Shown here: one piece after another, positions 24,495-62,300 of the stretch
Layout: each line of letters begins with the position of its first letter
Numbering within the stretch: position 1 is the stretch's first letter
From: Ophelia neglecta
Taxonomy: Eukaryota
Assembly (NCBI GenBank): GCA_965285935.1
Contig: OZ260665.1
Location: 41,602,001-41,666,000, forward strand
Reading direction: 5' to 3'
Length of the DNA: 64,000 bases
Notes under the pieces: generated by a model
Told to the model about the DNA's origin: nothing
Databases searched by the model: none
Seen by the model: only the letters and a program-made list of their open reading frames with translations
Program-made: the position numbers and the translations under genes

Positions 24495-27400
24495 CTGTCT
24501 TTGGCTGATCCTGCAGTACTGGCATTATTTCAGGTTCATCTATAACTGAATGTTGTTGGCTATCTGGCTCATTTTCTATCTCACCCACCGAAACCTGAAT
24601 AATTTCTTCATCAGACTCTATAAATGGATCGTTTTGAGGAACCATATTGCTTCTTGGTCGTGACTCATCAGCAATCAAGGATTCATTAATGATTTCACTA
24701 TACAACCCGTTCTCACCTGCGAAGCCATGCCTTTCCAATTCAGGGGCTACATCACCTTCTAAAATAGTACGTTCAGTCTTGAGCTGTTGCTCTGTTGTAG
24801 TGACAATCTTACGTTTCACCACTGTGCCATCTTCAAGTGTTTCTTCATACTCTTGCACGTCAGTTGCAGTTTCAGGTTCCCCATCTTGTCTATCGGTGTA
24901 TTTAGAATACTCAGGTTCCATTAAATCTGCTCGACTGAGAATATCCTGGGCTTGTTCCTCATTTGAAGGCAATTCTGTCTCAGGTCCTTCCAGCACAACC
25001 CGTTTGATAATTGTCTGCTTTTGCTTCGTTTTGATGACTTTTCGTTTTACCACAGTTCCATCAGGCAGCGTTTCCTCAAACTCTTGAACATCAGTTTCTA
25101 CTTGTGGTTCACCTTCAATAGTGTCTGTGTACATGCGAACACTTCCTCCTTCATTGTCAGACTCATAGGGAGAATGAATGGCTGCAGGAGACATGGAAGG
25201 AATAGGTGAGGAAAGTTCACGGGCATCACTGATACTTGAACGAATACTTGAAGTATCTGAAAAAATTTCAGACTCTGGAACCTCCTCAGTAATAACATCC
25301 TCAACAACATCCCCATCAGGACCCACCCTACGGATCTTTTTTGTCACCACTTTCTTTACTTTTGCTTTCATTACTCTACGTTTTACTATGCTACCATCTA
25401 AAAGCACTTCCTCAATTTCTTCAAAGTCATCAGATATTTCCCCAGATGGATACACTCCTTGTTGGAAAGGAGCATGAGGGTCAGCATGAATTTCCTCTTC
25501 ACTGACAGGCTTCTTCACCGCTTCGACAGGTTTAACAAGGTCAGGAGAAATTGTATATTCATCTACAGCTGAAGACGACATTATTGATGTTCTTGTCCGG
25601 GTAACGACACTCTTTATCCAGGATCCATCAGGTAATGACTCTTCACTTTCTTGGACTGAGGGTTTGGTGGCTAGGTTAGGACCTGTTATGTCCGTGACTC
25701 CAGCTGGCACTTCACTGATATCGGTCTTGATGTCCTTGCCAACAACGAAGACTGTTTCATTTTCTATCTCTCCCTCTTCTGGGTGGAGGATCTTTTCCTT
25801 TACCGGTTGAGAGTGGCTGACAGTTGTGACCTTGGTTGTTACTACAGTGCCATCTTCAAGTGTCTCCACATTTTCCTGCACATCTTCACTGGTGGTCACT
25901 GGACCGGTTTCTTTCTCTATCACTACTGGACCGGTTAACGTAGAAGTAGATTTAGTTGTGGTTTTCTTTATCCAAGAACCATCTGGCAAGCCTTGTTCTG
26001 ACTCAGATGTGCTGATTTTTGTTGATATATTTGGGATATTGGTATCTGTGACACCTACAGGAATTTCGGTTATCTCTTCTTCTATTTCCTTTCCGACCAA
26101 TGATTCCTTCTCTTGGATTGTTTCTGTGCCATCTTTATCCACTATCTCGGTAACTGGCTGAATATGAGATATTGTGGTCACTCTAGTCTTAATATAAGTT
26201 TTATGAACTCCGGTTTCTACAATATTTTCACTCTCCTGAACATCAGTCTTGGTTATGACATCTCCTTTTGTCACTTGCAAAAGTTTCTCAGAATCTACAG
26301 GAATCGACAATGGTTCTTGTGGAAGGAATTCTGCCTCAATACCTTCAACAGTCACCTTCTGTTCAGATTCAACAGGAGGTGCCTGTGCTCCAACCACCTT
26401 GACTGTTGTGGATTTGACTTGCTTTTTGACCCACGTACCATCTGGTAGGGTTTCTTCCAAGTCCTTTATAGCAACCTCTGTGGCCAGATCGTCCCCCTCA
26501 ACACTACTCACACCTGCTGGTAAGGAAGTGATCTCTTCAAGGATTTCGGCTCCCAATGTTTGCTCTACAACATTGCTGGTTGGTTGTCCATCCACTACCA
26601 GGTGCTCAGTAACTTCCTGGACATGTGTTGTAGTAGTGATTCTGGTGTTGACAGTTGTTCCATCATCCAATGACTCGGTTTTCTCCTGAACATCAGTTTT
26701 AGTGGTCACTGGGCCCAGTTCTCTTTCTACTGGCTGAACCTGTTCCACTGGTTGAGGGCCCACTATGGATGTGCTTGTCCGGGTAACTACACTCTTTATC
26801 CAGGATCCATCCGGCAATGACTCCTCACTTTCTTGGACTGAGGTTTTGTTGGCTAGGTTAGGACCTGTTATGTCCGTGACTCCAGCTGGTACTTCACTGA
26901 TATCAGTCTTGATGTCCTTGCCAACTACAAAGACTGTTTCATTTTCTATCTCTCCCTCTTCTGGGTGGAGGATCTTTTCCTTTACCGGTTGAGAGTGGCT
27001 GACAGTTGTGACCTTGGTTGTTACTACAGTGCCATCTTCAAGTGTCTCCACATTGTCCTGCACATCTTCACTGGTGGTCACTGGACCGGTTTCTTTCTCT
27101 ATCACTACTGGACCGGTTAACGTAGAAGTAGATGTAGTTGTGGTTTTCTTTATCCAAGTACCATCTGGCAAGCCTTGTTCTGACTCAGATGTGCTGATTT
27201 TTGTTGATATATTTGGGATATTGGTATCTGTGATACCTACAGGAATTTCAGTTATCTCTTCTTCTATTTCCTTTCCAACCAATGATTCCTTCTCTTGGAT
27301 TGCATCTTTGCCCTCTTTATCCACTATCTCGGTAACTGGCTGAATATGAGAGATTGTGGTCACTTTAGTCTTGATATGAGTTTTAAGAACGCCGGCTTCA

Positions 27401-30400
27401 ACAATATCTTCACTCTCCTGAACATCAGTCTTGGTTATGACATCTCCTTTTGTCACTTGCAAAAGTTTCTTAGAATCTACAGGAATCGACAATGGTTCTT
27501 GTGGAAGGAATTCTGCCTCAACACCTTCCACAGTCACCTTCTGTTCAGATTCTACAGGAGGTGCCTGTGCTCCAACCACCTTGACTGTTGTGGATTTGAC
27601 TTGCTTTTTGACCCACGTACCATCGGGTAGGGTTTCTTCCAAGTCCTTTATAGCAACCTCTGTGGCCAGATCGTCCCCCTCAACACTACTCACACCTGCT
27701 GGTAAGGAAGTGATCTCTTCAAGGATTTCGGCTCCCAATGTTTGCTCTACAACATTGCTGGTTGGTTGTCCATCCACTACCAGGTGCTCAGTAACTTCTT
27801 GGACATGTGTTGTAGTAGTGATTCTGGTGTTGACAGTTGCTCCATCATCCAATGACTCGGTTTTCTCCTGAACATCAGTTTTAGTGGTCACTGGGCCCAG
27901 TTCTCTTTCTACTGGCTGAACCTGTTCCACTGGTTGAGGGCCCACTATGGATGTGCTTGTCCGGGTAACGACACTCTTTATCCAGGATCCATCCGGCAAT
28001 GACTCCTCACTTTCTTGGACTGAGGTTTTGGTGGCTAGGTTAGGACCTGTTATGTCCGTGACTCCAGCTGGTACTTCACTGATATCAGTCTTGATGTCCT
28101 TGCCAACTACAATGACTGTTTCATTTTCTATCTCTCCCTCTTCTGGGTGGAGGATCTTTTCCTTTACCGGTTGAGAGTGGCTGACAGTTGTGACCTTGGT
28201 TGTTACTACAGTGCCATCTTCAAGTGTCTCCACATTGTCCTGCACATCTTCACTGGTGGTTACTGGACCGGTTTCTTTCTCTATCACTACTGGACCGGTT
28301 AACGTAGAAGTAGATGTAGTTTTGGTTTTCTTTATCCACGTTCCATCTGGCAAGCCTTGTTCTGACTCAGATGTGCTGATTTTTGTTGATATATTTGGGA
28401 TATTGGTATCTGTGATACCTACAGGAATTTCAGTTATCTCTTCTTCTATTTCCTTTCCAACCAATGATTCCTTCTCTTGGATTGTATCTTTGCCATCTTT
28501 ATCCACTATCTCGGTAACTGGCTGAATATGAGAGGTTGTGGTCACTTTAGTCTTGATATGAGTTTTAAGAACGCCGGCTTCAACAATATCTTCACTCTCC
28601 TGAACATCAGTCTTGGTTATGACATCTCCTTTTGTCACTTGCAAAAGTTTCTTAGAATCTACAGGAATCGACAATGGTTCTTGTGGAAGGAATTCTGCCT
28701 CAACACCTTCCACAGTCACCTTCTGTTCAGATTCAACAGGAGGTGCCTGTGCTCCAACCACCTTGACTGTTGTGGATTTGACTTGCTTTTTGACCCACGT
28801 ACCATCGGGTAGGGTTTCTTCCAAGTCCTTTATAGCAACCTCTGTGGCCAGATCGTCCCCCTCAACACTACTCACATCTGCTGGTAAGGAAGTGATCTCT
28901 TCAAGGATTTCGGCTCCCAATGTTTGCTCTACAACATTGCTGGTTGGTTGTCCATCCACTACCAGGTGCTCAGTAACTTCTTGGACATGTGTTGTAGTAG
29001 TGATTCTGGTGTTGACAGTTGCTCCATCATCCAATGACTCGGTTTTCTCCTGAACATCAGTTTTAGTGGTCACTGGGCCCAGTTCTCTTTCTACTGGCTG
29101 AACCTGTTCCACTGGTTGAGGGCCCACTATGGATATGCTTGTCCGGGTAACGACACTCTTTATCCAGGATCCATCCGGCAATGACTCCTCACTTTCTTGG
29201 ACTGAGGTTTTGGTGGCTAGGTTAGGACCTGTTATGTCCGTGACTCCAGCTGGTACTTCACTGATATCAGTCTTGATGTCCTTGCCAACTACAAAGACTG
29301 TTTCATTTTCTATCTCTCCCTCTTCTGGGTGGAGGATCTTTTCCTTTACCGGTTGAGAGTGGCTGACAGTTGTGACCTTGGTTGTTACTACAGTGCCATC
29401 TTCAAGTGTCTCCACATTGTCCTGCACATCTTCACTGGTGGTTACTGGACCGGTTTCTTTCTCTATCACTACTGGACCGGTTAACGTAGAAGTAGATGTA
29501 GTTTTGGTTTTCTTTATCCACGTTCCATCTGGCAAGCCTTGTTCTGACTCAGATGTGCTGATTTTTGTTGATATATTTGGGATATTGGTATCTGTGATAC
29601 CTACAGGAATTTCAGTTATCTCTTCTTCTATTTCCTTTCCAACCAATGATTCCTTCTCTTGGATTGTATCTTTGCCATCTTTATCCACTATCTCGGTAAC
29701 TGGCTGAATATGAGAGATTGTGGTCACTTTAGTCTTGATATGAGTTTTAAGAACGCCGGCTTCAACAATATCTTCACTCTCCTGAACATCAGTCTTGGTT
29801 ATGACATCTCCTTTTGTCACTTGCAAAAGTTTCTCAGAATCTACAGGAATCGACAATGGTTCTTGTGGAAGGAATTCTGCCTCAATACCTTCAACAGTCA
29901 CCTTCTGTTCAGATTCAACAGGAGGTGCCTGTGCTCCAACCACCTTGACTGTTGTGGATTTGACTTGCTTTTTGACCCACGTACCATCGGGTAGGGTTTC
30001 TTCCAAGTCCTTTATAGCAACCTCTGTGGCCAGATCGTCCCCCTCAACACTACTCACACCTGCTGGTAAGGAAGTGATCTCTTCAAGGATTTCGGCTCCC
30101 AATGTTTGCTCTACAACATTGCTGGTTGGTTGTCCATCCACTACCAGGTGCTCAGTAACTTCTTGGACATGTGTTGTAGTAGTGATTCTGGTGTTGACAG
30201 TTGCTCCATCATCCAATGACTCGGTTTTCTCCTGAACATCAGTTTTAGTGGTCACTGGGCCCAGTTCTCTTTCTACTGGCTGAACCTGTTCCACTGGTTG
30301 AGGGCCCACTATGGATGTGCTTGTCCGGGTAACGACACTCTTTATCCAGTATCCATCCGGCAATGACTCCTCACTTTCTTGGACTGAAGTTTTGGTGGCT

Positions 30401-33400
30401 AGGTTAGGACCTGTTATGTCCGTGACTCCAGCTGGTACTTCACTGATATCAGTCTTGATGTCCTTGCCAACTACAAAGACTGTTTCATTTTCTATCTCTC
30501 CCTCTTCTGGGTGGAGGATCTTTGCCTTTACCGGTTGAGAGTGGCTGACAGTTGTGACCTTGGTTGTTACTACAGTGCCATCTTCAAGTGTCTCCACATT
30601 GTCCTGCACATCTTCACTGGTGGTCACTGGACCGGTTTCTTTCTCTATCACTACTGGACCGGTTAACGTAGAAGTAGATGTAGTTGTGGTTTTCTTTATC
30701 CACGTTCCATCTGGCAAGCCTTGTTCTGACTCAGATGTGCTGATTTTTGTTGATATATTTGGGATATTGGTATCTGTGATACCTACAGGAATTTCAGTTA
30801 TCTCTTCTTCTATTTCCTTTCCAACCAATGATTCCTTCTCTTGGATTGTATCTTTGCCATCTTTATCCACTATCTCGGTAACTGGCTGAATATGAGAGAT
30901 TGTGGTCACTTTAGTCTTGATATGAGTTTTAAGAACGCCGGCTTCAACAATATCTTCACTCTCCTGAACATCAGTCTTGGTTATGACATCTCCTTTTGTC
31001 ACTTGCAAAAGTTTCTCAGAATCTACAGGAATCGACAATGGTTCTTGTGGAAGGAATTCTGCCTCAATACCTTCAACAGTCACCTTCTGTTCAGATTCAA
31101 CAGGAGGAGCCTGTGCTCCAACCACCTTGACTGTTGTGGATTTGACTTGCTTTTTGACCCACGTACCATCGGGTAGGGTTTCTTCCAAGTCCTTTATAGC
31201 AACCTCTGTGGCCAGATCGTCCCCCTCAACACTACTCACACCTGCTGGTAAGGAAGTGATCTCTTCAAGGATTTCGGCTCCCAATGTTTGCTCTACAACA
31301 TTGCTGGTTGGTTGTCCATCCACTACCAAGTGCTCAGTAACTTCTTGGACATGTGTTGTAGTAGTGATTCTGGTGTTGACAGTTGTTCCATCATCCAATG
31401 ACTCGGTTTTCTCCTGAACATCAGTTTTAGTGGTCACTGGGCCCAGTTCTCTTTCTACTGGCTGAACCTGTTCCACTGGTTGAGGGCCCACTATGGATGT
31501 GCTTGTCCGGGTAACGACACTCTTTATCCAGGATCCATCCGGCAATGACTCCTCACTTTCTTGGACTGAGGTTTTGGTGGCTAGGTTAGGACCTGTTATG
31601 TCCGTGACTCCAGCTGGTACTTCACTGATATCAGTCTTGATGTCCTTGCCAACTACAAAGACTGTTTCATTTTCTATCTCTCCCTCTTCTGGGTGGAGGA
31701 TCTTTTCCCTTACCGGTTGAGAGTGGCTGACAGTTGTGACCTTGGTTGTTACTACAGTGCCATCTTCAAGTGTCTCCACATTGTCCTGCACATCTTCACT
31801 GGTGGTCACTGGACCGGTTTCTTTCTCTATCACTACTGGACCGGTTAACGTAGAAGTAGATACAGTTGTGGTTTTCTTTATCCACGTTCCATCTGGCAAG
31901 CCTTGTTCTGACTCAGATGTGCTGATTTTTGTTGATATATTTGGGATATTGGTATCTGTGATACCTACAGGAATTTCAGTTATCTCTTCTTCTATTTCCT
32001 TTCCAACCAATGATTCCTTCTCTTGGATTGTATCTTTGCCATCTTTATCCACTATCTCGGTAACTGGCTGAATATGAGAGATTGTGGTCACTTTAGTCTT
32101 GATATGAGTTTTAAGAACGCCGGCTTCAACAATATCTTCACTCTCCTGAACATCAGTCTTGGTTATGACATCTCCTTTTGTCACTTGCAAAGGTTTCTCA
32201 GAATCTACAGGAATCGACAATGGTTCTTGTGGAAGGAATTCTGCCTCAATACCTTCAACAGTCACCTTCTGTTCAGATTCAACAGGAGGTGCCTGTGTTC
32301 CAACCACCTTGACTGTTGTGGATTTGACTTGCTTTTTGACCCACGTACCATCGGGTAGGGTTTCTTCCAAGTCCTTTATAGCAACCTCTGTGGCCAGATC
32401 GTCCCCCTCAACACTACTCACACCTGCTGGTAAGGAAGTGATCTCTTCAAGGATTTCGGCTCCCAATGTTTGCTTTACAACATTGCTGGTTGGTTGTCCA
32501 TCCACTAACAGGTGCTCAGTAACTTCTTGGACATGTGTTGTAGTAGTGATTCTGGTGTTGACAGTTGTTCCATCATCCAATGACTCGGTTTTCTCCTGAA
32601 CATCAGTTTTAGTGGTCACTGGGCCCAGTTCTCTTTCTACTGGCTGAACCTGTTCCACTGGTTGAGGGCCCACTATGGATGTGCTTGTCCGGGTAACGAC
32701 ACTCTTTATCCAGGATCCATCCGGCAATGACTCCTCACTTTCTTGGACTGAGGTTTTGGTGGCTAGGTTAGGACCTGTTATGTCCGTGACTCCAGCTGGT
32801 ACTTCACTGATATCAGTCTTGATGTCCTTGCCAACTACAAAGACTGTTTCATTTTCTATCTCTCCCTCTTCTGGGTGGAGGATATTTTCCTTTACCGGTT
32901 GAGAGTGGCTGACAGTTGTGACCTTGGTTGTTACTACAGTGCCATCTTCAAGTGTCTCCACATTGTCCTGCACATCTTCACTGGTGGTCACTGGACCGGT
33001 TTCTTTCTCTATCACTACTGGACCGGTTAACGTAGAAGTAGATGTAGTTGTGGTTTTCTTTATCCAAGTACCATCTGGCAAGCCTTGTTCTGACTCAGAT
33101 GTGCTGATTTTTGTTGATATATTTGGGATATTGGTATCTGTGATACCTACAGGAATTTCAGTTATCTCTTCTTCTATTTCCTTTCCAACCAATGATTCCT
33201 TCTCTTGGATCGTATCTTTGCCATCTTTATCCACTATCTCGGTAACTGGCTGAATATGAGAGATTGTGGTCACTTTAGTCTTGATATGAGTTTTAAGAAC
33301 GCCGGCTTCAACAATATCTTCACTCTCCTGAACATCAGTCTTGGTTATGACATCTCCTTTTGTCACTTGCAAAAGTTTCTCAGAATCTACAGGAATCGAC

Positions 33401-36400
33401 AATGGTTCTTGTGGAAGGAATTCTGCCTCAATACCTTCAACAGTCACCTTCTGTTCAGATTCAACAGGAGGTGCCTGTGCTCCAACCACCTTGACTGTTG
33501 TGGATTTGACTTGCTTTTTGACCCACGTACCATCGGGTAGGGTTTCTTCCAAGTCCTTTATAGCAACCTCTGTGGCCAGATCGTCCCCCTCAACACTACT
33601 CACACCTGCTGGTAAGGAAGTGATCTCTTCAAGGATTTCGGCTCCCAATGTTTGCTCTACAACATTGCTGGTTGGTTGTCCATCCACTACCAAGTGCTCA
33701 GTAACTTCTTGGACATGTGTTGTAGTAGTGATTCTGGTGTTGACAGTTGTTCCATCATCCAATGACTCGGTTTTCTCCTGAACATCAGTTTTAGTGGTCA
33801 CTGGGCCCAGTTCTCTTTCTACTGGCTGAACCTGTTCCACTGGTTGAGGGCCCACTATGGATGTGCTTGTCCGGGTAACGACACTCTTTATCCAGGATCC
33901 ATCCGGCAATGACTCTTCACTTTCTTGGACTGAGGTTTTGGTGGCTAGGTTAGGACCAGTTATGTCCGTGACTCCAGCTGGTACTTCACTGATATCAGTC
34001 TTGATGTCCTTGCCAACTACAAAGACTGTTTCATTTTCTATCTCTCCCTCTTCTGGGTGGAGGATCTTTTCCTTTACCGGTTGAGAGTGGCTGACAGTTG
34101 TGACCTTGGTTGTTACTACATCGCCATCTTCAAGTGTCTCCACATTGTCCTGCACATCTTCACTGGTGGTCACTGGACCGGTTTCTTTCTCTATCACTAC
34201 TGGACCGGTTAACGTAGAAGTAGATGTAGTTGTGGTTTTCTTTATCCAAGTACCATCTGGCAAGCCTTGTTCTGACTCAGATGTGCTGATTTTTGTTGAT
34301 ATATTTGGGATATTGGTATCTGTGATACCTACAGGAATTTCAGTTATCTCTTCTTCTATTTCCTTTCCAACCAATGATTCCTTCTCTTGGATCGTATCTT
34401 TGCCATCTTTATCCACTATCTCGGTAACTGGCTGAATATGAGAGATTGTGGTCACTTTAGTCTTGATATGAGTTTTAAGAACGCCGGCTTCAACAATATC
34501 TTCACTCTCCTGAACATCAGTCTTGGTTATGACATCTCCTTTTGTCACTTGCAAAAGTTTCTCAGAATCTACAGGAATCGACAATGGTTCTTGTGGAAGA
34601 AATTCTGCCTCAATACCTTCAACAGTCACCTTCTGTTCAGATTCAACAGGAGGTGCCTGTGCTCCAACCACCTTGACTGTTGTAGATTTGACTTGCTTTT
34701 TGACCCACGTACCATCGGGTAGGGTTTCTTCCAAGTCCTTTATAGCAACCTCTGTGGCCAGATCGTCCCCCTCAACACTACTCACACCTGCTGGTAAGGA
34801 AGTGATCTCTTCAAGGATTTCGGCTCCCAATGTTTGCTCTACAACATTGCTGGTTGGTTGTCCATCCACTACCAGGTGCTCAGTAACTTCTTGGACATGT
34901 GTTGTAGTAGTGATTCTGGTGTTGACAGTTGTTCCATCATCCAATGACTCGGTTTTCTCCTGAACATCAGTTTTAGTGGTCACTGGGCCCAGTTCTCTTT
35001 CTACTGGCTGAACCCGTTCCACTGGTTGAGGGCCCACTATGGATGTCCTTGTCCGGGTAACGACACTCTTTATCCAGGATCCATCCGGCAATGACTCCTC
35101 ACTTTCTTGGACTGAGGTTTTGGTGGCTAGGTTAGGACCTGTTATGTCCGTGACTCCAGCTGGTACTTCACTGATATCAGTCTTGATGTCCTTGCCAACT
35201 ACAAAGACTGTTTCATTTTCTATCTCTCCCTCTTCTGGGTGGAGGATCTTTTCCTTTACCGGTTGAGAGTGGCTGACAGTTGTGACCTTGGTTGTTACTA
35301 CAGTGCCATCTTCAAGTGTCTCCACATTGTCCTTCACATCTTCACTGGTGGTCACTGGACCCGTTTGTTTCTCTATCACTACAGGACCGGTTAACGTAGA
35401 AGTAGATATAGTTGTGGTTTTCTTTATCCAAGTACCATCTGGCAAGCCTTGTTCTGACTCAGATGTGCTGATTTTTGTTGATATATTTGGGATATTGGTA
35501 TCTGTGATACCTACAGGAATTTCAGTTATCTCTTCTTCTATTTCCTTTCCAACAAATGATTCCTTCTCTTGGATTGTATCTTTGCCATCTTTATCCACTA
35601 TCTCGGTAACTGGCTGAATATGAGAGATTGTGGTCACTTTAGTCTTGATATGAGTTTTAAGAACGCCGGCTTCAACAATATCTTCACTCTCCTGAACATC
35701 AGTCTTGGTTATGACATCTCCTTTTGTCACTTGCAAAAGTTTCTCAGAATCTACAGGAATCGACAATGGTTCTTGTGGAAGGAATTCTGCCTCAATACCT
35801 TCAACAGTCACCTTCTGTTCAGATTCAACAGGAGGTGCCTGTGCTCCAACCACCTTGACTGTTGTGGATTTGACTTGCTTTTTGACCCACGTACCATCGG
35901 GTAGGGTTTCTTCCAAGTCCTTTATAGCAACCTCTGTGGCCAGATCGTCCCCCTCAACACTACTCACACCTGCTGGTAAGGAAGTGATCTCTTCAAGGAT
36001 TTCGGCTCCCAATGTTTGCTCTACAACATTGCTGGTTGGTTGTCCATCCACTACCAGGTGCTCAGTAACTTCTTGGACATGTGTTGTAGTAGTGATTCTG
36101 GTGTTGACAGTTGTTCCATCATCCAATGACTCGGTTTTCTCCTGAACATCAGTTTTAGTGGTCACTGGGCCCAGTTCTCTTTCTACTGGCTGAACCTGTT
36201 CCACTGGTTGAGGGCCCACTATGGATGTGCTTGTCCGGGTAACGACACTCTTTATCCAGGATCCATCCGGCAATGACTCCTCACTTTCTTGGACTGAGGT
36301 TTTGATGGCTAGGTTAGGACCTGTTATGTCCGTGACTCCAGCTGGTACTTCACTGATATCAGTCTTGATGTCCTTGCCAACTACAAAGACTGTTTCATTT

Positions 36401-39400
36401 TCTATCTCTCCCTCTTCTGGGTGGAGGATCTTATCCTTTACCGGTTGAGAGTGGCTGACAGTTGTGACCTTGGTTGTTACTACAGTGCCATCTTCAAGTG
36501 TCTCCACATTGTCCTGCACATCTTCACTGGTGGTCACTGGACCGGTTTCTTTCTCTATCACTACTGGACCGGTTAACATAGAAGTAGATGTAGTTGTGGT
36601 TTTCTTTATCCACGTTCCATCTGGCAAGCCTTGTTCTGACTCAGATGTGCTGATTTTTGTTGATATATTTGGGATATTGGTATCTGTGATACCTACAGGA
36701 ATTTCAGTTATCTCTTCTTCTATTTCCTTTCCAACCAATGATTCCTTCTCTTGGATTGTATCTTTGCCATCTTTATCCACTATCTCAGTAACTGGCTGAA
36801 TATGAGAGATTGTGGTCACTTTAGTCTTGATATGAGTTTTAAGAACGCCGGCTTCAACAATATCTTCACTCTCCTGAACATCAGTCTTGGTTATGACATC
36901 TCCTTTTGTCACTTGCAAAAGTTTCTCAGAATCTACAGGAATCGACAATGGTTCTTGTGGAAGGAATTCTGCCTCAATACCTTCAACAGTCACCTTCTGT
37001 TCAGATTCAACAGGAGGTGCCTGTGCTCCAACCACCTTGACTGTTGTGGATTTGACTTGCTTTTTGACCCACGTACCATCGGGTAGGGTTTCTTCCAAGT
37101 CCTTTATAGCAACCTCTGTGGCCAGATCGTCCCCCTCAACACTACTCACACCTGCTGGTAAGGAAGTGATCTCTTCAAGGATTTCGGCTCCCAATGTTTG
37201 CTCTACAACATTGCTGGTTGGTTGTCCATCCACTACCAGGTGCTCAGTAACTTCTTGGACATGTGTTGTGGTAGTGATTCTGGTGTTGACAGTTGTTCCA
37301 TCATCCAATGACTCGGTTTTCTCCTGAACATCAGTTTTAGTGGTCACTGGGCCCATTTCTCTTTCTACTGGCTGAACCTGTTCCACTGGTTGAGGGCCCA
37401 CTATGGATGTGCTTGTCCGGGTAACGACACTCTTTATCCAGGATCCATCCGGCAATGACTCCTCACTTTCTTGGACTGAGGTTTTGGTGGCTAGGTTAGG
37501 ACCTGTTATGTCCGTGACTCCAGCTGGTACTTCACTGATATCAGTCTTGATGTCCTTGCCAACTACAAAGACTGTTTCATTTTCTATCTCTCCCTCTTCT
37601 GGGTGGAGGATCTTTTCCTTTACCGGTTGAGAGTGGCTGACAGTTGTGACCTTGGTTGTTACTACAGTGCCATCTTCAAGTGTCTCCACATTGTCCTGCA
37701 CATCTTCACTGGTGGTCACTGGACCCGTTTGTTTCTCTATCACTACAGGACCGGTTAACGTAGAAGTAGATATAGTTGTGGTTTTCTTTATCCAAGTACC
37801 ATCTGGCAAGCCTTGTTCTGACTCAGATGTGCTGATTTTTGTTGATATATTTGGGATATTGGTATCTGTGATACCTACAGGAATTTCAGTTATCTCTTCT
37901 TCTATTTCCTTTCCAACCAATGATTCCTTCTCTTGGATTGTATCTTTGCCATCTTTATCCACTATCTCGGTAACTGGCTGAATATGAGAGATTGTGGTCA
38001 CTTTAGTCTTGATATGAGTTTTAAGAACGCCGGCTTCAACAATATCTTCACTCTCCTGAACATCAGTCTTGGTTATGACATCTCCTTTTGTCACTTGCAA
38101 AAGTTTCTCAGAATCTACAGGAATCGACAATGGTTCTTGTGGAAGGAATTCTGCCTCAATACCTTCAACAGTCACCTTCTGTTCAGATTCAACAGGAGGT
38201 GCCTGTGCTCCAACCACCTTGACTGTTGTGGATTTGACTTGCTTTTTGACCCACGTACCATCGGGTAGGGTTTCTTCCAAGTCCTTTATAGCAACCTCTG
38301 TGGCCAGATCGTCCCCCTCAACACTACTCACACCTGCTGGTAAGGAAGTGATCTCTTCAAGGATTTCGGCTCCCAATGTTTGCTCTACAACATTGCTGGT
38401 TGGTTGTCCATCCACTACCAGGTGCTCAGTAACTTCTTGGACATGTGTTGTAGTAGTGATTCTGGTGTTGACAGTTGTTCCATCATCCAATGACTCGGTT
38501 TTCTCCTGAACATCAGTTTTAGTGGTCACTGGTCCTAATTCCTTTTCAGGTTGTAAATTATCTACCAATGTCTTTACTGTTTTAGTTGTTGTTTTCTTCA
38601 GCCATGTTTCGTCAGGAAGGATTTCTTCTGATTCCTGTACTGACATTTTTGAAGACAAATTTGCATCGACAGTATCAACAAGTTCAGCTGGAAGCTCTGT
38701 TATGTCCTCCATGATTTCCTGGCCAAGCACCTCTTCATGTTCTACGAACGTTTGCTCGCCTGCTACAATAATTGATTCAGTAACTGGTTGTATATGAGTG
38801 ATGGTTGTTAATTTTCTCTTAACTAACGTGCCATCAGACAAAACTCGCTCACTCTCTTCAACAGCTGTCCTTGTTAATATATCTCCTTTGGTAAGTTTTA
38901 ACTCCTTACAAGGCTCTGGAAGCGTAGCCAGCTGGTGTTCAGGGAAGTCAGAAGAAATGGATTCTACACCACAAACTTGCTGTACCAATTCATCAGGTGG
39001 TGAAGTTGTTCCAATCGTACGAACTACAACTTTACTTACATGTCGTTTTTCCCACGTCCCATCAGAAAGAGTTTGTTCCGAATCATGCTCGGATTGCTCT
39101 GTTTCTAAATTAGCACCAAATGGGCCGCTCACACCTTGAGGAAGGACCAATATATCTTCTTTTACTTCAGTGCCAAGAATCTTCTTAGACTCGCGAATAG
39201 ATTCTTCCTTTCCTTGCATAGTTCGCTCAGACAGCGGAATGAAATGAGTGGTTGTTGTTATGGTCACCTTAACTGTTGTCCCGTCAGGTAAAACTTCTTC
39301 TTTATCCTTAACTGTGGTCATTGTCGTCGGCTCTCCTTCTACAATTTCAGTTTTTGCCGGCGGTATTAGACTTTTTTCATCTCGATCAATAAGCATTTGA

Positions 39401-39491
39401 TCCTGTTTCATCATCTCTTCTTGAATCACTTCTTCCAGCGTCGGGGTTTTTTCCCTGTAATCTTCTTCGCCGGGAGTAGTTTGCCCAAAAC
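24495..39491 (-). CDS. ANK: Giant exon B (14,997 bp, about 4,999 aa)
   Basis: Contains ORF 24490..39429; acceptor TATTTCAG|GT is in frame, donor ACAG|GTTAGG; phase 1-1. Confidence 0.88.
25580..38540 (-). repeat. Coding tandem array, 11 x 1,182 bp (394 aa), near-identical copies; each unit contains 3 sub-modules
   Basis: Antisense shadow ORFs recur at exactly 1,182-bp spacing (26249, 27431 ... 38069); only a few substitutions per copy. Confidence 0.96.
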
Positions 39492-40193
39492 CTGAAATAC
39501 CTTCCTTAATTATGCTTTTGTTTTCAACGATTCGGATATTCAGTTAAATCTGGTTTAGTAAGTGAACTGTCATTACCACAAATAACAAACAAATATACAG
39601 CGTCAACAGCATAATGGCCTATCGAACATCTACCTGTTGTATTCAAACAGACATTCATAATTCAGTAGTCAGTAGGGGGATTATAGGGCGTTATATTCTA
39701 CACTACTAACGTTCTGTACATTTGCTTTCAGGTTCTATGTAAATCAGTTAACCCCAGGCTGCCTCTTGTAAAATGTTAATACCTCGTTAAATATGTGTTC
39801 AATGTTAACTTCTTTAACCTCTTCTTAGATGTGTGTAAATATTTCATTTGATTCACGTACTTGGTCTCCCTAATCTTCTCCATCACAAGCTTTCTATCGA
39901 CTATCATTCAAAGAAGAGTAAGAAACCATAGATGCATTTCAATACTACCTATACTAAGTGCTCTTGGTCTATTAAAGATACGTGCGTTTTTCCAATTTAT
40001 TTGCTGTACTAATCTGTGACTACAATACTGGAGCATAACTGATCATGTCTTCAAATCCTTCCCTAGCTCCTAAATTCATGGATGCATACTTATAGGGCCA
40101 AATTCTTGACCCAACATCATGTCTTATTCCTTAATACAATATATTTTGCCATACTGTTTGCACGTTGCACAATATATGTGTTCGAGTTCCTAC

Positions 40194-43100
40194 CTTGGCA
40201 ACCTTCATCTGGTGCAGCATGAACTGCTGAGTCTTCCTGCCTAAGAAGACGTTCCACTGCAGACACAACAGTTGTTGTCATAGTTTTCTTTTCCCATGTT
40301 CCATCAGGGCGCGTTTGTTCAGATTCTTGAACGGACACTTTTACATCAAGATTATCTCCTTCGGGCGAGTGTAAACCCTCTGGTAATTGCGTCACCTCTT
40401 CCAGAACTTCAGTGCCTAATATCTGTTCTGACTCATTAACAGTTTCAATACCATCACTTATCGTTTTTTCTATGATTGGTTTGTAATGGGTGACAGTAGT
40501 AGTTTTAGTTTTAACGGTGGTTCCATCATCCAGTGCCTCCTCACTTTCCTTCGTGTCTGTCCTTGTAGTCACTTCACCTTCTATCACTTCTGTTTTTGCC
40601 TCGGGTTCTTTCAATGTTAGTTCCTGTTCAATTTCTCTCGGTGCACCTATGTCATCTGCCATTAGTTGAATAGGTACTTCTTCGACGTTCGCTACTTTTT
40701 GATTAAGTTCCACGTGCGGTTCATCTGTTTGCACCTTTTTAACAGATGTTGTTTTAACTGTTTTCTTTGCCCATGTTCCATCAGGGAGAGTTTGCTCAGA
40801 ATCTTGAACGGACACTTTTACTTCCAAATTGTCTCCTTCCGAGGAATGGACGCCCTCGGGCAATTCTGTGACTTCCTCCAGTATGTCAGTGCCTACAATG
40901 TGGTCAACTTTATTGATTGTTTCAATACCATCTATACTGGTAATTTCAATAACTGGCTTATAGTAGGTCAGAGTAGTGGTCTTGGTCTTAAGAGTGGTAC
41001 CATCATCGAGTACCTCCTCGCTGTCTTTAGTGTCAGTCTTAGTGGTCACCTCTCCTTCTATCACTTCTGTCTTGGTCTCGGGTTCTTTCAAAGTCAGATC
41101 CTGTTCAATTTCTTTGGGTGTACTAATTTCATTAGCCGTAAGTTGACTAGGTTCTTCTTCGATTTGTGATATTTTTTGATCAAGTTTCACTGCCGGTTCA
41201 ACTGACTGCACCTTTTTAACAGTGGTTGTTTTCACCGTTTTCCTTATCCATATTCCATCAGAAAGAGTTTGTTCCGAGTCTTGAACAGACACTTTTACAT
41301 CCAGATTATCTCCTTCTGGAGAGAGTACATCCTCCGGTAATTCAGTTACTTCTTCCACGACCTCTGTGCCTAATACTTGTTCTGATTCATTAACAGTTTC
41401 TATTCCGTCACTAGTCGTTTTTTCTATAATTGGTTTGTAATGGGTGACAATAGTAGTTTTAGTTTTGACAGTGGTTCCATCATCAAGTACCTCCTCACTT
41501 TCCTTCGTGTCAGTCCTTGTGGTCACTTCTCCTTTTATCACTTCTGTCTTGGCCTCGGGTTCTTTAAAAGTAAGTTCTTGTTCAATTTCTCTCGGTGCAC
41601 TTATGTCGTCTTTCGTTAGTTGAATAGGTTCTTCCTTAACTTGTATTTTCTGCTCAAGTTCATCTGGCGGTTCACCTGTTTGCACCTTTTCACAAGTGGT
41701 TGTTTTTACTGTTTTTCTTATCCATGTTCCATCAGGGAGAGTTTGTTCCGAGTCTTGCACGGACACTTTAACATCCAAATTATCTACATCTTGAGAGAGT
41801 ACACCCTCCGGCAATTCAGCCACCTCTTCCAGAACTTCGGTGCCTACAACTTGTTCTGACTCATTGACAGTTTCAATACCATAACTAGTCGTTTTTTCCA
41901 CGATTGGTTTGTAATGGGTGACAGTAGTAGTTTTGGTTTTGACAGTGGTTCCATCATCCAGTAAGTCGTCACTTTCTTTAATATCAGTCCTTGTGGTCAC
42001 TTCTCCTTTTATCACTTCTGTTTTGATTTCAGGTTCTTTCAAAGATATTTCCTGTTCAATTTCTCTGGGTGCATTAATTTCATCTGCCGTTAGTTGAATG
42101 GGTAGTTCTTCGACCTGTGCTACATTTTGACCAAGATCCACTACGGGTTCCACTTCGTGCACCTTTTCAACAGTGGTTGTTTTAACAGTTTTTCTTGTCC
42201 ATGTTCCATCAGGCAGAGTTTGTTCCGAGTCTTGAACGGACACTTTTACATCCAGATTATCTCCTTCGGGGGAGTGGGTACCCTCCGGTAATTTAGTCAC
42301 CTCTTCTAGAACCTCTGTGCCTAAAATTTGCTCTGATTCATTCTCAGTTTCAATGCCGTCACTAGTCGTTTTTTCTATGATTGGTTTGTAATGGGTGACA
42401 ATAGTAGATTTAGTTTTGACGGTGGTTCCATCATCCAGTACCTCGTCACTTTCCTTCGTGTCAGTCCTTGTTGTAACATCTCCCTCTATCACTTCAGTCT
42501 TGATCTCCGGTTCTTTCAAAGATATTTCCTGTTCAATTTCTTTGGGTGAACTAATTTCATCCGCTATTCGTTGACTAGGTACTTCTTCGCCTTGAGCTAC
42601 TTTTTGATCAGGTTCCGCTGATGGTTCAAATATTTGCCCCTTTTTAACAGTGGTTGTTTTAACCGTTTTCCTTGTCCATGTTCCATCAGGGAGAGTCTGT
42701 TCAGAATCTTGAACTGACACTTTTACATCAAGATTATCTCCTTCGGGCGAGTGTAAACCCTCTGGTAAATATGTCACCTCTTCCAGAACTTCAGTGCCTA
42801 ATACTTGTTCTGATTCATTAACAGTTTCAATACCATCACTAATCGTTTTTTCTAAGACTGGTTTGTAATGGGTGATAGTGGTAGTTTTGGTTTTGACAGT
42901 GGTTCCATCAGCCAGTAAATCCTCACTTTCTTTAGTATCAGTCCTTGTGGTCACTTCTCCTTCTATCACTTCTGTCTTGACCTTGGGTTCTTTCAAAGTA
43001 TGTTCCTGTTCAGTTTCTCTAGGTGAACTTATGTCATCTGCCATTAATTGAATAGGTACTTCTTCGATCTGTGCTACTTGTTGATCAAGTTCACCTTGCG

Positions 43101-46100
43101 GTTCATCTATTTGCACCTTTTTAACAGTGCTTGTTTTAACTGTTTTCCTTGACCATGTTCCATCAGGGAGAGTTTGTTCCGAGTCTTGCACGGACACCTT
43201 TACTTGCACATTATCAACATCTGGAGAGAGTATGCCCTCCGGTAATTCGGTCACCTCTTCTAGAATCTCTGTGCCCACTACTTTTTCTGATTCATTGGCA
43301 GTTTCAATACCACCACTAATGGTCTTTTCTATAATTGGTTTGTAATGGGTGACAGTAGTAGTTTTGGTTTTGACAGTGGTTCCATCATCCAGTAAGTCCT
43401 CTCTTTCTTTAGTATCAGTCCTTGTGGTCACGTCTCCCTCCATCACATCAGTCTTGGTCTCGGATTCTTTCAAAGATATTTCCTGTTCGATTTCTTTGGG
43501 TGCACAGATTTCTTCTGCCTTTAGTTGAATGGGTACTTCATCGACTTGTGCTACTTTCTGCTCCAGTTCCACTGGTGGTTCTACTGCCTGCACCTTTTTA
43601 ACAGTGGATGTTTTCACTGTTTTCCTTGACCATGTACCATCCGGGAGAGTTTGGTCAGACTCTTGCACGGACACTTTTACATCAAGATTATCTCCTTCGG
43701 TGGAGTGGATACCCTCTGATAATTCAATCACATCTTCCAGAACTTCTGTGCCTAATACTTGTTCTGATTCATTAACAGTTTCAATACCATCACTAATCGT
43801 TTTTTCATTGATTGGTTTGTAATGTGTGACAATAGTAGTTTTAGTTTTAACGGTGGTTCCATCATCTAGTACCTCCTCACTTTCCTTCGTGTCTGTCCTT
43901 GTGGTCACTTCTCCTTCTATCACTTCTGTCTTGGCCTCTGGTTCTTTCAAAGTGAGTTCCTGTTCAATTTCTCTTGGTGCACCTATGTCTTCTGCCATTA
44001 GTTGAATAGCTTCTTCTTCGATGTGTGCTACTTTTTGATCAAGTTCCACATGCGGTTCATCTGTTTGCACCTTTTTAACAATGGTTGTTTTAACCGTTCT
44101 TCTCGACCATGTTCCATCAGGGAGAGTTTGTTCTGAGTCTTGCACAGACACTTTCACTTCCACATTATCCATATCTGGAGAGTGTATACCCTCCGGTAAT
44201 TCAGTCACCTCTTCCAGAACTTCGGTGCCTACAACTTGTTCAGATTCATTCTCAGTTTCAATACCATCACTAATCTTTTTTTCTATAATTGGTTTGTAAT
44301 GGGTGACAGTAGTAGTTTTGGTTTTGACAGTGGTTCCATCATCCAGTAAGTCCTCTCTTTCTTTAGTATCAGTCCTTGTGGTAACATCTCCCTCTACCAC
44401 TTCTGTCTTGGCCTCGGGTTCTTTCAAAGATATTCCCAGTTCAATTTCTTTGGGTGCACCCATTTCTTCTGCCGTTAGTTGAATGGGTATTTCTTCGACT
44501 TGTGCTACTTTCTGTTCAAATTCCACTGGTGGTTCAACTGTGTGCATTTTTTTAACAGTGGTTGTTTTCACTGTTTTCTTTGACCATGTACCATCAGGGA
44601 GAGTTTGTTCAGACTCTTGTACGGACACCTTTACATCCAGCTTTTCTCCTTCGGGGGATTGGATACCCTCTGGTAATTCAGTCACCTCTTCCAGAACTTC
44701 GCTGCCTAATACTTGTTCAGATTCATTGACAGTTTCAATACCATCACTAATCTTTTTTTCTATGATTGGTTTGTAATGGGTGACAGTAGTAGTTTTGGTT
44801 TTGACAGTGGTTCCATCAGCCAGTAAATTCTCACTTTCTTTAATATCAGTCCTTGTGGTCACTTCTCCAATCACTTCTGTCTTGACCTCGGGTTCTTTAA
44901 AATATATTTCCTGTTCGATTTCTTTGGGTGCACTTGTGTCATCTGCAATTAGTTGTATAGTTTCTTCTTCGATGTGTGCTACTTTTTTATCTAGTTCCAC
45001 AGGCGGTTCAACTCTTTGCACCTTTTTAACAGTGGTTGTTTTGACCGTTTTCCTTGTCCATGTTTCATCAGGGAGAGTTTGTTCAGACTCTTGCACGGAC
45101 ACTTTCACTTCAACATTATCAACGTCTGGAGAGTGTATGCCCTCCGGTAATTCAGTCACCTCTTCTAGAATCTCTGTGCCTAATACTTGTTCTGATTCAT
45201 TGGCAGTTTCAATGCCTTCACTAGTTGTTTTTTCTACAATTGGTTTGTAATGGGTGACAGTAGTAGTTTTGGTTTTGACAGTGGTTCCATCATTCAGTAA
45301 ATCTTCACTTTCTTTAGTATCAGTTCTTGTGGTCACATCTCCTTCTATCACTTCTGTCTTGGCCTTGGGTTCTTTTACAAATATTTCCTTTTTAATTTCT
45401 CTAGGTGCACTTATTTCGTCTGCCACTAGTTGAATGGGTACTTCTTCGACCTGTGCTTCTTTCTGCTCAAGTTCATCTGGCGGTTCAACTGTGTGCATTT
45501 TTTTAACAGTGGTTGTTTTCACTTTTTTCCTTGTCCATGTTCCATCAGGAAGAGCTTGTTCTGAGTCTACAACGGACATTTTTACATCCAGATTATCTCC
45601 TTCCGGGGAGTGTATACCTACAGGTAATTCAGTCACCTCTTCAAGAATCTCTTGGCCTAAAACTTTGTCTGATTCATTGAGAGTTTCAATACCATCACTT
45701 ATCGTTTTTTCTACGATTGATTTATAATGGGTGACAGTGGTAGTTTTAGTTTTGACAGTAGTGCCATCATCCAGTACCTCCTCACTTTCTTTAGTATCAG
45801 TCTTTGTGGTCACCACTCCTTCTATTACTTCTGTCTTTGCCTCAGTTTGGGGTTTCATCGTTACAGCGGTAGTTCTTACAGCCTTTTTTACCCATGTTCC
45901 ATTTGCAAGTGTCTCCTCTGTTTCTTGAACAGTGGATTTTACTTCAAGATTGTCCCCGGTGGTGTCTGTAACTCCTTCTGGTAACTCCACTCTTTCTTCT
46001 AGTATTTCTTTTCCAAGGAATAATTCCTCTGTCTTTTCCGTTTCTTGTCCATCTAATGTGGTCGATGTTGTAATTGGTTGAAAGTAGTTAATTATTGTAC

Positions 46101-46820
46101 ATTTTGACTTTACTTTCGTTCCATTATCAAGGATATTTTCGGTTTCTTTTATCTCTGATTTTGTAACTATTTCGCCTTGGGAAACTTTACTCGTAGTTAC
46201 AGGACTTTGAAGCAAAGTTTCTTTCTTCAGTGTAGCGTAAATTGTTTTGACTGTTCTTCTTAGGTAAGACCCATTGCTTTGTACAGTTTCAGACGTTTCT
46301 GCCTCACATTCGTCTCTTTCAAGTTCTTCCAGATTTTCAAAAGAGACCCCAGCCGGCACATAAGTAATCTCTTCCTGGATGTCTGTGCCTATTAGTACTT
46401 CTTCAATGATATTGGAACTTTCTTCTATCCCATCAATGAATACTTTCTCAATATGTGGTTCAATGTGTGAAATAGTAGTCACTTTGGTTATAACGGTAGT
46501 GCCATCTTGTTGGGTTTGTTTATTTTCAGTTACACTACATTTATCTTGGATTGGTGCTTTTATAATATCCTTAGTCACTGCTGGTGGTTTTGTAGGAGGG
46601 ACAATTTCAGTTATGTCAGATTCTAGGATATGATCTGGAACAGTTTCAGAGTACACCATTTCAACAGGTTCTGCGGTTTGGGGGACACTAATCTTGTCAA
46701 CTAGTTCTTGTTCTATTCCAGTTGGGCTAACAGTGTCATAGCTTTCCTGAAATGTTCCCCTGTCTGGGTGTTCAGGGGTTGGAGTAAGTTCCCTGTCTTC
46801 TTCTGACGGAGAACCTCTTT
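40194..46820 (-). CDS. ANK: Giant exon A (6,627 bp, about 2,209 aa), E/T/V/K-rich repeats
   Basis: Lies inside ORF 40117..46911; acceptor ATTTCCAG|AA, donor CAAG|GTAGGA; phase 1-1. Confidence 0.88.
40260..45845 (-). repeat. Coding tandem array, 12 x 477 bp (159 aa), moderately diverged
   Basis: The THYKP anchor recurs every 474-477 bp from about 40483 to 45724; two further diverged modules extend to about 46550. Confidence 0.92.
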
Positions 46821-62095: not shown

Positions 62096-62300
62096 CTACA
62101 AGAAAAGGAAAAAAGAAAGTGGTCACTATGAAACATTTTCCTGCAGGATTGCATTACATAATAGACATATTAGAATAAAATAATACCTTTTGCTATAAAG
62201 CCTTCAGAAAATAAATAGTTTTCAACCTATTATAGTTAGAAGTTCACTAGAAAGAATAAATATTAAATAATGTTGCCATGAGTATTTGCTGTCTGCTTAC

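What the first reader, a model, noticed from the sequence alone, without database searches (positions are those of the whole stretch)
25580..46560. A previously unrecognised 130-160 aa module amplified about 50 times across giant exons A and B
Seen: the shared consensus G.V.T.TD..E.E..L.DGT.V.TK.TT..H..P(V/I).E....G.E....E.V.G.E(I/V).EE(I/V)TE(L/I)P.G......N(L/I)....S..ESE..LPDGTW.KK...T. It occurs about 14 times in exon A, 33 times in the exon B array (3 per 394-aa unit) and twice more at 38540-39350. Alternating V/T/I strands around DG turns and a conserved Trp suggest folded beta-hairpin units rather than the purely disordered tails usually assumed for giant ankyrins (inference).
Basis: partly seen in the sequence, partly recalled or inferred. 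Interest (0 to 1): 0.8.

Follow-up and report, generated by a model that had tools for sequence, protein, structure and literature searches.

The report
Folded beta module in giant ankyrin
The huge tail of an invertebrate ankyrin gene is built from 51 copies of a roughly 110-residue unit that other species also have, that matches no catalogued domain, and that is confidently predicted to fold into a beta-sheet, so this supposedly disordered tail may be a string of folded beads.

Summary
A profile of the unit finds 14 copies in exon A, 35 in exon B (2 + 33) and 2 more in exon C. All 54 hits in the 762-Mb genome lie in this one locus.

The gene is a canonical ankyrin. Its ZU5 and UPA exons match only ankyrin-1/2/3 in the PDB, and the giant exons lie downstream of the death domain, as in protostomes.

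The conserved core is about 105-118 aa. The 118-159 aa periods are core plus a variable linker.

- **No known family:** nothing real in Pfam (the CDGP hit is only summed weak matches), PDB sequences or PDB/ESM folds. The unit is absent from the repeat table of the one survey I read.
- **Conserved elsewhere:** 170 unnamed cluster representatives carry it, some with 20-45 copies amplified separately in each lineage. One sits behind UPA and death-domain ORFs in another species.
- **Constraint:** dN/dS is 0.21 in the core against 0.55 in the linker.
- **Fold:** AlphaFold2 gives pLDDT 93-95 and an all-beta model, with the DG motifs at hairpin turns.
- **Origin:** the unit holds two copies of a DGT hairpin that also occurs in the conserved end block of the tail.

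Function is inferred, most likely a modular acidic rod or spacer. No RNA data exist. The scan holds notes on this same window only.

The parts
40194..46820 (-). Giant exon A as inferred from splice signals: 6627 nt, a multiple of 3, phase 1 at both ends
   Evidence: Acceptor TTTCCAG and donor AAG|GTAGGA read from the sequence. ORF. No RNA evidence exists.
45490..46593 (-). Three diverged modules at the start of exon A
   Evidence: HMM hits A115-224, A239-351 and A357-472. They sit on long separate branches in the module tree.
40249..45378 (-). Array of 11 modules in exon A, each 159 aa (about 116 aa core plus about 43 aa linker)
   Evidence: TRF period 477 nt, 11.7 copies, 81% matches. HMM hits of 159-168 bits. 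dN/dS is 0.21 in the core and 0.55 in the linker.
24495..39491 (-). Giant exon B as inferred from splice signals: 14997 nt, a multiple of 3, phase 1 at both ends. Its acceptor phase fits the exon A donor.
   Evidence: Acceptor TATTTCAG at 39492 and donor ACAG|GTTAGG just before the stop codon. No RNA evidence exists.
38557..39372 (-). Two diverged modules at the head of exon B
   Evidence: HMM hits B25-137 and B172-289.
25579..38571 (-). Array of 33 modules in exon B: 11 units of 1182 nt, each with three module subtypes
   Evidence: HMM hits of 149-160 bits. Units are on average 98.2% identical in DNA. The three subtypes form three separate clades.
24715..25467 (-). End block of exon B: three basic DGT-hairpin motifs, homologous to the first half of the module
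   Evidence: Module HMM hits at B4666-4735, B4768-4828 and B4843-4893 (E 7e-4 to 7e-11). It is 50-70% identical to 36 unnamed proteins of other species.
17820..18521 (-). Two further modules near the start of giant exon C
   Evidence: HMM hits C693-785 and C810-906. Whole-genome profile hits with E 8e-24 and 1.6e-23.
3588..4223 (-). Paralogous end block at the end of exon C
   Evidence: HMM hits C5450-5482 and C5550-5653. Sequences compared by eye.
62266..62649 (-). UPA-domain exon of the same gene, upstream of the giant exons in gene order
   Evidence: Matches only ankyrin-3/2/1 chains in the PDB, E 1.5e-26.
61281..62153 (-). Two death-domain exons (61878-62153 and 61281-61547). They follow directly after the UPA exon, with no giant exon between them.
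   Evidence: Pfam Death hit at window 61890-62060, E 5e-8. The second exon is my reading of the ORF translations.

Best explanation
The unit is an autonomously folding, all-beta domain of about 110 residues that belongs to the C-terminal tail of invertebrate giant ankyrins.

**Build of the unit.** It has three hairpins. Two are homologous 'DGT' hairpins: an acidic lead-in, a Leu-x-Asp-Gly-Thr turn, then a Thr/Val/Lys-rich return strand. They flank a longer central hairpin. The DGT hairpin is the same motif that occurs three times, in a basic Lys/Arg-rich form, in the strongly conserved end block of the tail. The module therefore arose by duplication and elaboration of that motif.

**Arrays.** Tandem amplification happened separately in each lineage and gave arrays of 20-45 modules. 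Neighbouring modules either abut directly or are joined by acidic linkers of up to about 46 residues.

**Proposed function (inferred).** The arrays turn the tail into a very long, strongly acidic chain of folded beads. This would act as a spacer or extensible tether between the membrane-bound ankyrin-spectrin lattice and the deeper cytoskeleton. That is the role proposed for the unrelated 76-aa repeat array of Drosophila Ank2-XL.

**Splicing (inferred).** Exons A and B are both multiples of three with the same phase at each end. Inclusion or skipping of either could therefore set tail length without a frame shift.

**What is shown:** copy number, gene identity, conservation, purifying selection and internal duplication.
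**What is predicted:** the fold.
**What is inferred:** the spacer function and the splicing.
For: - **Copies and exclusivity.** 51 full modules, all in this locus.
- **Gene identity.** ZU5, UPA and death-domain exons lie immediately upstream on the same strand.
- **Same layout elsewhere.** Locus L009 has UPA_2 and Death ORFs followed by a module ORF.
- **Conservation.** 170 cluster representatives at E<=1e-3 and 53 at E<=1e-30 among 1.84 billion proteins. Homologues carry 42, 19, 28, 31, 26 and 3 modules at 27-45% identity. None is more than 70% identical to the window, so they come from other species.
- **Selection.** In the exon A copies dN/dS is 0.21 in the core and 0.55 in the linker, with dS about 0.4-0.5.
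- **Fold.** pLDDT is 92.8 and pTM 0.74 for one module, and pLDDT 94.6 for two. All five models of each job are above 88, and the junction between modules is confident.
- **Model fits the alignment.** The DG motifs fall in the predicted turns. The 10-14 residue length differences between species fall at the tip of the long central hairpin.
- **Internal duplication.** Hairpin 1 against hairpin 3 gives hhalign probability 97%, E 3e-11.
- **Link to the end block.** Found in both directions.
- **Lineage-specific amplification.** Modules cluster by source protein in the tree.
- **Splice phases.**
- **Precedent.** Long exons downstream of the death domain, and the spacer idea for Ank2-XL, are described in PMC5135030.
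Against: - No RNA run holds this stretch, so expression, exon joining and tissue are unknown.
- The fold is a prediction. I could not inspect coordinates, so the shape (open ribbon or closed sheet) and the length per module are not known.
- Composition is borderline on a charge-hydropathy plot. Exon A modules fall on the 'disordered' side, and net charge is -7 to -15 per module.
- Only about 20 of 122 columns are clearly hydrophobic.
- Exon B units are 98% identical, so they carry almost no independent information on selection.
- Nothing tested here speaks directly to a spacer role.
Confidence: 0.55

Rival explanations
1. The arrays are a multivalent docking platform. Each module, being derived from the end-block hairpin that resembles the vertebrate obscurin-binding sites, would bind one copy of a partner such as an obscurin/UNC-89-like protein or microtubules. 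About 50 modules would then cluster many partners.
For: The first half of the module is homologous to the end-block motifs. Vertebrate ankyrin C-termini carry a 76-aa sequence with two obscurin-binding domains (PMC3575540). Conserved surface positions (W107 and the LP-x-G loop) could form a binding site.
Against: The Lys/Arg run that marks the end-block motifs is replaced by Thr/Val in the modules, which are net acidic at -7 to -15. The end block is 50-70% identical across species while the modules are only about 30-45% identical and are homogenised within each species. That pattern fits a selected shape or length better than a fixed interface. No partner was tested.
Confidence: 0.2
2. The tail is disordered in the cell, as usually assumed for giant ankyrin inserts. 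On this view the beta structure is an over-confident prediction for Thr/Val/Glu-rich repeats, or forms only on binding or under tension.
For: The composition is S/E/T/D/K/P-rich (54-57%), like other ankyrin long exons (PMC5135030). Charge-hydropathy values are borderline or on the 'disordered' side. No solved fold resembles the model: best Z is 4.8-5.6, below the usual chance level.
Against: pLDDT is 93-95 in all models with only 43-56 sequences. Gly and Trp are invariant at predicted turns and strands, and indels are confined to a hairpin tip. The core is under stronger constraint than the linker. Thr+Val+Ile make up 32-35% of residues, which favours strands.
Confidence: 0.15
3. The giant ORFs are not part of the ankyrin protein. 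They would be a separate downstream gene, or exons that are rarely or never expressed and kept open only by recent amplification.
For: There is no RNA evidence. Splice sites are inferred from sequence alone. Exon B units are very young, at 98% identity.
Against: The ORFs run 2264-6335 codons without a stop. Exon A copies have dS about 0.5 with dN/dS 0.21. The same order of UPA, Death and module ORF occurs in another species. The A donor and B acceptor are phase-compatible. Long exons downstream of the death domain are the rule in protostome ankyrins (PMC5135030).
Confidence: 0.05

Closest known systems
Drosophila Ank2-XL long exon (93 repeats of 76 aa)
   Same: It is a giant ankyrin isoform made by long exons downstream of the death domain. 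It carries a large tandem array in an acidic tail, proposed to act as a molecular spacer (PMC5135030).
   Different: The published 76-aa consensus shows no resemblance to this module. That consensus is Pro/Ser/Lys/Asp-rich. The survey reports that such repeats are recognisable only between very close species, whereas this module is found in many species and is predicted to be folded.
C. elegans UNC-44 giant exon repeats (27-aa and 60-aa units)
   Same: The long exon lies downstream of the death domain. The 27-aa unit has a Thr-run followed by an aromatic residue and an acidic stretch, which faintly recalls the return strand of the DGT hairpin.
   Different: The unit is four times shorter and has no DG turn, no Trp and no central hairpin. 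Homology was not tested and is not claimed.
[quoted passage not shown]
   Same: It lies in the C-terminal regulatory region after the death domain and is made of short duplicated modules (PMC2942773; PMC3575540). From my own memory of ankyrin-1/2 C-termini, these sites have an acidic lead-in, a Gly turn and a Val/Lys/Arg-rich return strand like the end-block motifs here.
   Different: The resemblance is recalled, not tested, because no vertebrate sequence was available to the tools. The modules have lost the basic run, are about 110 aa long and are amplified about 50-fold. The review read (PMC2942773, citing Hopitzan 2006) describes a vertebrate-specific, muscle-expressed module of the OTBD.
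Pfam PF24238 (CDGP domain)
   Same: Whole-protein scores of exon A (38.8 bits) and of two homologues reach the family cut-off of 24.3 bits.
   Different: No single stretch passes. Only about 11-22 of the 68 profile positions are matched, over the LPDGTW-x-K turn. None of 56 single modules hits it. The score is a sum of many weak repeats, so this is not membership.
Staphylococcal SasG/Aap G5-E repeat rods
   Same: As an analogy from my own knowledge, these are tandem, low-hydrophobicity, beta-only repeats that look disordered by composition but form a long rod. Aap and SasG chains appear among the weak Foldseek rows for the two-module model.
   Different: The matches are not significant (E 8e-3 to 9e-2, TM 0.10-0.23). 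They are absent from the top 50 of the VIA re-alignment. No sequence relation exists (the G5 hit, E 0.22, is on the end block only). SasG/Aap are bacterial and extracellular.

Membership tests
Canonical ankyrin (ANK repeats, ZU5-ZU5-UPA, death domain) | ZU5-ZU5-UPA spectrin-binding cassette | tested here: met
   Pfam ZU5 hit at window 71090-71317, same strand, E 1e-19. That exon and the UPA exon match only ankyrin-1/2/3 in the PDB. Further ZU5/UPA exons were read.
Canonical ankyrin (ANK repeats, ZU5-ZU5-UPA, death domain) | Death domain after UPA | tested here: met
   Pfam Death hit at window 61890-62060, E 5e-8, same strand. The second half at 61281-61547 was read from the translation.
Canonical ankyrin (ANK repeats, ZU5-ZU5-UPA, death domain) | 24 N-terminal ANK repeats | tested here: inconclusive
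   The genome-wide Ank_2 search was swamped: 3581 candidates, only 150 scored, none near this locus listed. The upstream DNA beyond window +10 kb was not fetched.
Protostome-type giant ankyrin long exon | Very long exon(s) downstream of the death domain | tested here: met
   ORFs of 2264, 4979 and 6335 codons lie 15-60 kb downstream of the death-domain exons on the same strand. None lies between UPA and the death domain. Definition taken from PMC5135030.
Protostome-type giant ankyrin long exon | Composition bias (Ser+Glu about 25%; S, E, T, D, K, P above 55%) | tested here: met
   S+E is 20-24% and SETDKP 53-57% in A, B and C. Thr and Val are unusually high and Ser low.
Protostome-type giant ankyrin long exon | Inclusion in a transcript joined to the ankyrin core | not testable with these tools
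   No RNA run holds the stretch. The three holders are DNA-like runs of one study.
Pfam PF24238 CDGP | A domain-level match over most of the 68-position profile | tested here: not met
   No stretch passes. The best covers profile positions 22-38. 0 of 56 single modules match.
Vertebrate OTBD / obscurin-binding sites | Sequence homology to the 76-aa OTBD of ankyrin-1/2/3 | not testable with these tools
   No vertebrate ankyrin tail was returned by any search, and none is in the PDB. The resemblance rests on memory only.
Vertebrate OTBD / obscurin-binding sites | Binding to obscurin or titin | not tested
   This needs an experiment.

The most novel reading that the evidence does not exclude
This is a new family of folded protein domains with a beta fold that has no solved relative, specific to the tails of invertebrate giant ankyrins. 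It was built from the same ancestral hairpin that in vertebrates became the obscurin-binding sites. It was amplified independently to 20-50 copies in several lineages. Giant ankyrin tails in these animals would then be titin-like chains of folded, possibly force-bearing beads and not disordered polymers.
Probability: 0.4. Interest if true: 0.75.

Novelty: new variant of a known kind. Interest (0 to 1): 0.6.

Why it matters
Giant ankyrins organise axon initial segments, axonal microtubules and muscle membranes. Their giant inserts are treated as fast-evolving sequence of biased composition, whose repeats are not conserved beyond close relatives (PMC5135030).

A repeat that is conserved across species, under purifying selection and predicted to fold would change how these tails are modelled. 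They would have a defined length per module, possible mechanical unfolding, and defined surfaces.

It would also give a small recombinant unit that can be expressed and studied. The homology between the module and the conserved end block offers a testable route from a short ankyrin tail motif to a full domain. It also bears on whether the obscurin-binding type of motif is older than vertebrates.

Tried and rejected
- **Pfam CDGP (PF24238).** It looked like a hit on whole exons, but it is a sum of weak matches to one turn. Rejected.
- **Other Pfam rows.** All are below cut-off and differ from module to module.
- **PDB sequence searches.** Nothing for the module profile or the end block.
- **Fold searches.** Foldseek PDB, VIA wide and VIA second look for both models, plus the ESM Atlas shape search for the single-module model, gave no match above the usual chance level. 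The ESM Atlas feature search gave no usable hit.
- **SasG/Aap similarity.** Considered as a structural relative and rejected as unsupported. It is kept only as an analogy.
- **Naming the homologues.** 10 cluster look-ups returned no names or organisms, so the taxonomic range is unknown. Other agents' notes call the genome mollusc- or annelid-like. I did not test this.
- **RNA evidence.** No RNA run holds the stretch, so I did not spend the read-laying run. The only holders are DNA-like runs of one study, probably the assembly's own source.
- **Genome-wide Ank_2 search.** Swamped by other ankyrin-repeat genes and uninformative.
- **Hopitzan 2006.** Not held in the library.
- **Technical failures.** A regular expression for end-block motifs found nothing and was replaced by phmmer. 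Locus L006 did not give the expected ORF in my six-frame translation and was left out.
- **Joined models.** Each exon was handled by reference on its own.
Full report
**What is in the window.** The minus strand carries three stop-free ORFs: A (46911-40117, 2264 codons), B (39429-24490, 4979 codons) and C (20555-1548, 6335 codons). The window is contig 8, 41,602,001-41,666,000, of a 762-Mb genome.

**Which gene it is.**
- A Pfam ZU5 exon lies 7 kb beyond the window end on the same strand.
- That exon and the UPA exon at 62266-62649 match only ankyrin-1, -2 and -3 among all PDB sequences (E 3e-33 and 1.5e-26).
- Death-domain exons follow directly, at 61878-62153 (Pfam hit) and 61281-61547 (read from the translation).
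- The gene is therefore a canonical ankyrin, and the giant exons lie downstream of the death domain.
- According to Jegla et al. 2016 (PMC5135030), that position is the protostome and echinoderm arrangement, not the chordate one.
- The ANK-repeat region itself was not located, because the genome-wide search was swamped.

**The observation.** I built an HMM from the units and ran it on the three translations.
- Full-length hits: 14 in A, 35 in B (2 diverged copies, then 33 as 11 units of three subtypes) and 2 near the start of C. That makes 51 in all.
- A six-frame search of the whole genome with the profile finds 54 hits, all inside this locus.
- Periods are 159 aa in A and 118/123/153 aa in B.
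- Alignment of 56 non-redundant modules from this window and four other loci shows a conserved core of about 105-118 aa. Its nearly invariant positions are G31, G67, G80 and W107.
- The remainder of each period is a linker of 0-46 aa, so '130-160 aa' is the period and not the domain.

**Is it a described family?**
- Pfam gives no domain-level match. PF24238 (CDGP) reaches its whole-protein cut-off on exon A and on two homologues only by summing many weak matches to about 11-22 profile positions over one turn. None of 56 single modules hits it.
- The module profile finds nothing in PDB sequences.
- The survey of ankyrin long exons lists repeat units of 12-76 aa. It states that repeats are recognisable only between very close species, and none of its consensus sequences resembles this unit.
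- I could not search InterPro or annotated animal proteomes, so 'previously unrecognised' holds only as far as these sources go.

**Relatives.**
- A word search with exon B found six giant proteins at about 30% identity. They carry 42, 19, 28, 31, 26 and 3 modules.
- Their loci show the same row of giant ORFs on one strand.
- A full HMMER search of 1.84 billion cluster representatives with the profile found 170 proteins at E<=1e-3 and 53 at E<=1e-30. Some have up to 46 matched stretches and many have a single module.
- None has a name or organism.
- None is more than 70% identical to the window over 80 aa or more, so they come from other species.
- In locus L009 a single-module ORF lies 2.5 kb downstream of ORFs with UPA_2 and Death Pfam hits on the same strand. 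That is independent support for the module being an ankyrin tail feature.
- In a tree of 112 modules, copies cluster by source. All 17 from P0002 form one clade, as do all 3 from P0006 and 12 of the 14 from exon A, and each exon B subtype forms its own clade. Only the two closely related sources P0004 and P0005 interleave.
- The arrays were therefore amplified, or homogenised, separately in each lineage.

**Constraint.**
- Among the ten complete 159-aa units of the 11-module exon A array, dS is about 0.4-0.5. dN/dS is 0.21 in the core and 0.55 in the linker.
- The exon B units are 98.2% identical in DNA and say little.
- Between species, the 10-14 residue length differences fall at one place, the tip of the predicted central hairpin.

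**Structure.**
- AlphaFold2 on one exon A module with alignment A1 gave mean pLDDT 92.8 and pTM 0.74. The model has six strands: 7-12, 16-27, 33-53, 56-77, 89-101 and 107-119.
- A two-module stretch of exon B with a 43-row alignment gave pLDDT 94.6 and pTM 0.65. It has twelve strands and a confident junction.
- From the strand lengths I infer a six-stranded meander with a protruding two-stranded arm. I could not inspect coordinates, so shape and length per module remain unknown.
- No solved or Atlas structure resembles it convincingly. Foldseek's best is E 2e-3 with TM below 0.3, VIA's best Z is 4.8 and 5.6 (below the usual chance level of 7-8), and the Atlas best is TM 0.55 to an unnamed cluster.
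- Composition is Thr 15%, Glu 13% and Val 12% in the aligned modules, with net charge -7 to -15 per module. This is borderline on a charge-hydropathy plot.

**Origin.**
- The first hairpin (residues 15-41) and the last (89-115) of the module are homologous (hhalign 97%, E 3e-11, 27 columns). The central hairpin is not related to either.
- The module HMM also hits three motifs in the non-repetitive end block of exon B and in its paralogue at the end of exon C. A single end-block motif used as query finds modules in other species.
- The end block is much better conserved (50-70% identity in 36 proteins). It is basic where the modules are Thr-rich.
- It resembles, from my memory only, the obscurin-binding sites of vertebrate ankyrin C-termini, which the literature describes as a 76-aa sequence with two binding domains (PMC3575540; PMC2942773). 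I could not test that link.

**Gene structure (inferred from sequence only).**
- Exon A runs 46820-40194 (6627 nt) and exon B runs 39491-24495 (14,997 nt).
- Both are multiples of three with phase 1 at both ends, and the A donor fits the B acceptor.
- The B donor lies just before the stop codon, and a phase-1 acceptor precedes ORF C.
- Each giant exon could thus be included or skipped without a frame shift.
- No RNA run holds this stretch, so none of this is confirmed.

**Reading.**
- Most likely (0.55): the module is a folded beta domain, and the arrays make a long, acidic, modular rod or tether. This is functionally comparable to the spacer proposed for the unrelated repeats of Drosophila Ank2-XL.
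- Multivalent binding platform: less likely (0.2), because the modules have lost the basic run of the end-block motif and evolve by within-species homogenisation.
- A tail that is disordered despite the prediction cannot be excluded (0.15).
- The ORFs not being part of the ankyrin protein is unlikely (0.05).

**Verdict.** This is a new kind of repeat for giant ankyrin tails, and its fold and function still need experiments.

Noticed in passing
window 20440-20557, minus strand: The 5' end of ORF C encodes, right after an in-frame ATG that follows a CCTCAG acceptor-like site, about 35 very hydrophobic residues before the acidic sequence starts. This may be only a translated pyrimidine tract. It could also be a membrane anchor of an alternative start, as in vertebrate small ankyrin 1, which has an N-terminal transmembrane segment (PMC3575540).
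   Followed up: partly
window 1565-1575 and 24495, minus strand: Both ORF B and ORF C have a good phase-1 splice donor (ACAG|GT) a few bases before their stop codon. Each may therefore either end the protein or be spliced onward. A further 635-codon ORF lies on the same strand about 18-20 kb downstream (L004 2-1906).
   Followed up: partly
window 52000-52197, minus strand: A small ORF between the death domain and exon A contains a DG-hairpin-like motif: an acidic run, W-D-G, then a V/I/K-rich stretch. It may be a further exon carrying a single hairpin.
   Followed up: no
window 4650-17560, minus strand: Exon C carries a different, much longer array of a repeat with an invariant hydrophobic A-I-I-D-G-G-I-V-I-G core.
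   Followed up: no
window 53172-54082: A tandem repeat of 30 nt, 30.6 copies, 79% matches, lies in the intron region between the death domain and exon A.
   Followed up: no
P0006 / L008 10001-20425: In another species the homologous giant exon has only three full modules. It has instead amplified the single DGT hairpin (E-E-W-E-E-T-L-S-D-G-T-I-I-K-R-K type, paired units of about 90-95 aa) some 30 times, and it ends in the same conserved end block. P0035 likewise has 46 stretches matching only the last hairpin.
   Followed up: partly
L006 (ENA record named dsDNA_phage_704): A 21-kb contig labelled as a phage in its source carries a 4112-aa protein with 28 ankyrin-tail modules, so it is almost certainly animal DNA misfiled as viral. 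My six-frame translation of the locus did not reproduce the ORF.
   Followed up: partly
P0184, P0185 (other species): Two short proteins carry three DGT-hairpin motifs in a different context, with no modules and only weak similarity to the end block (33-36% identity). The hairpin motif may therefore occur outside ankyrin tails.
   Followed up: no
G000 contig 12, about 62.5-64.4 Mb; also contig 9 at 15-24 Mb and contig 2 at 4.0-4.5 Mb: There are very large clusters of ankyrin-repeat ORFs: 3581 Ank_2 candidates genome-wide, and most of the 150 scored lie in these regions.
   Followed up: no
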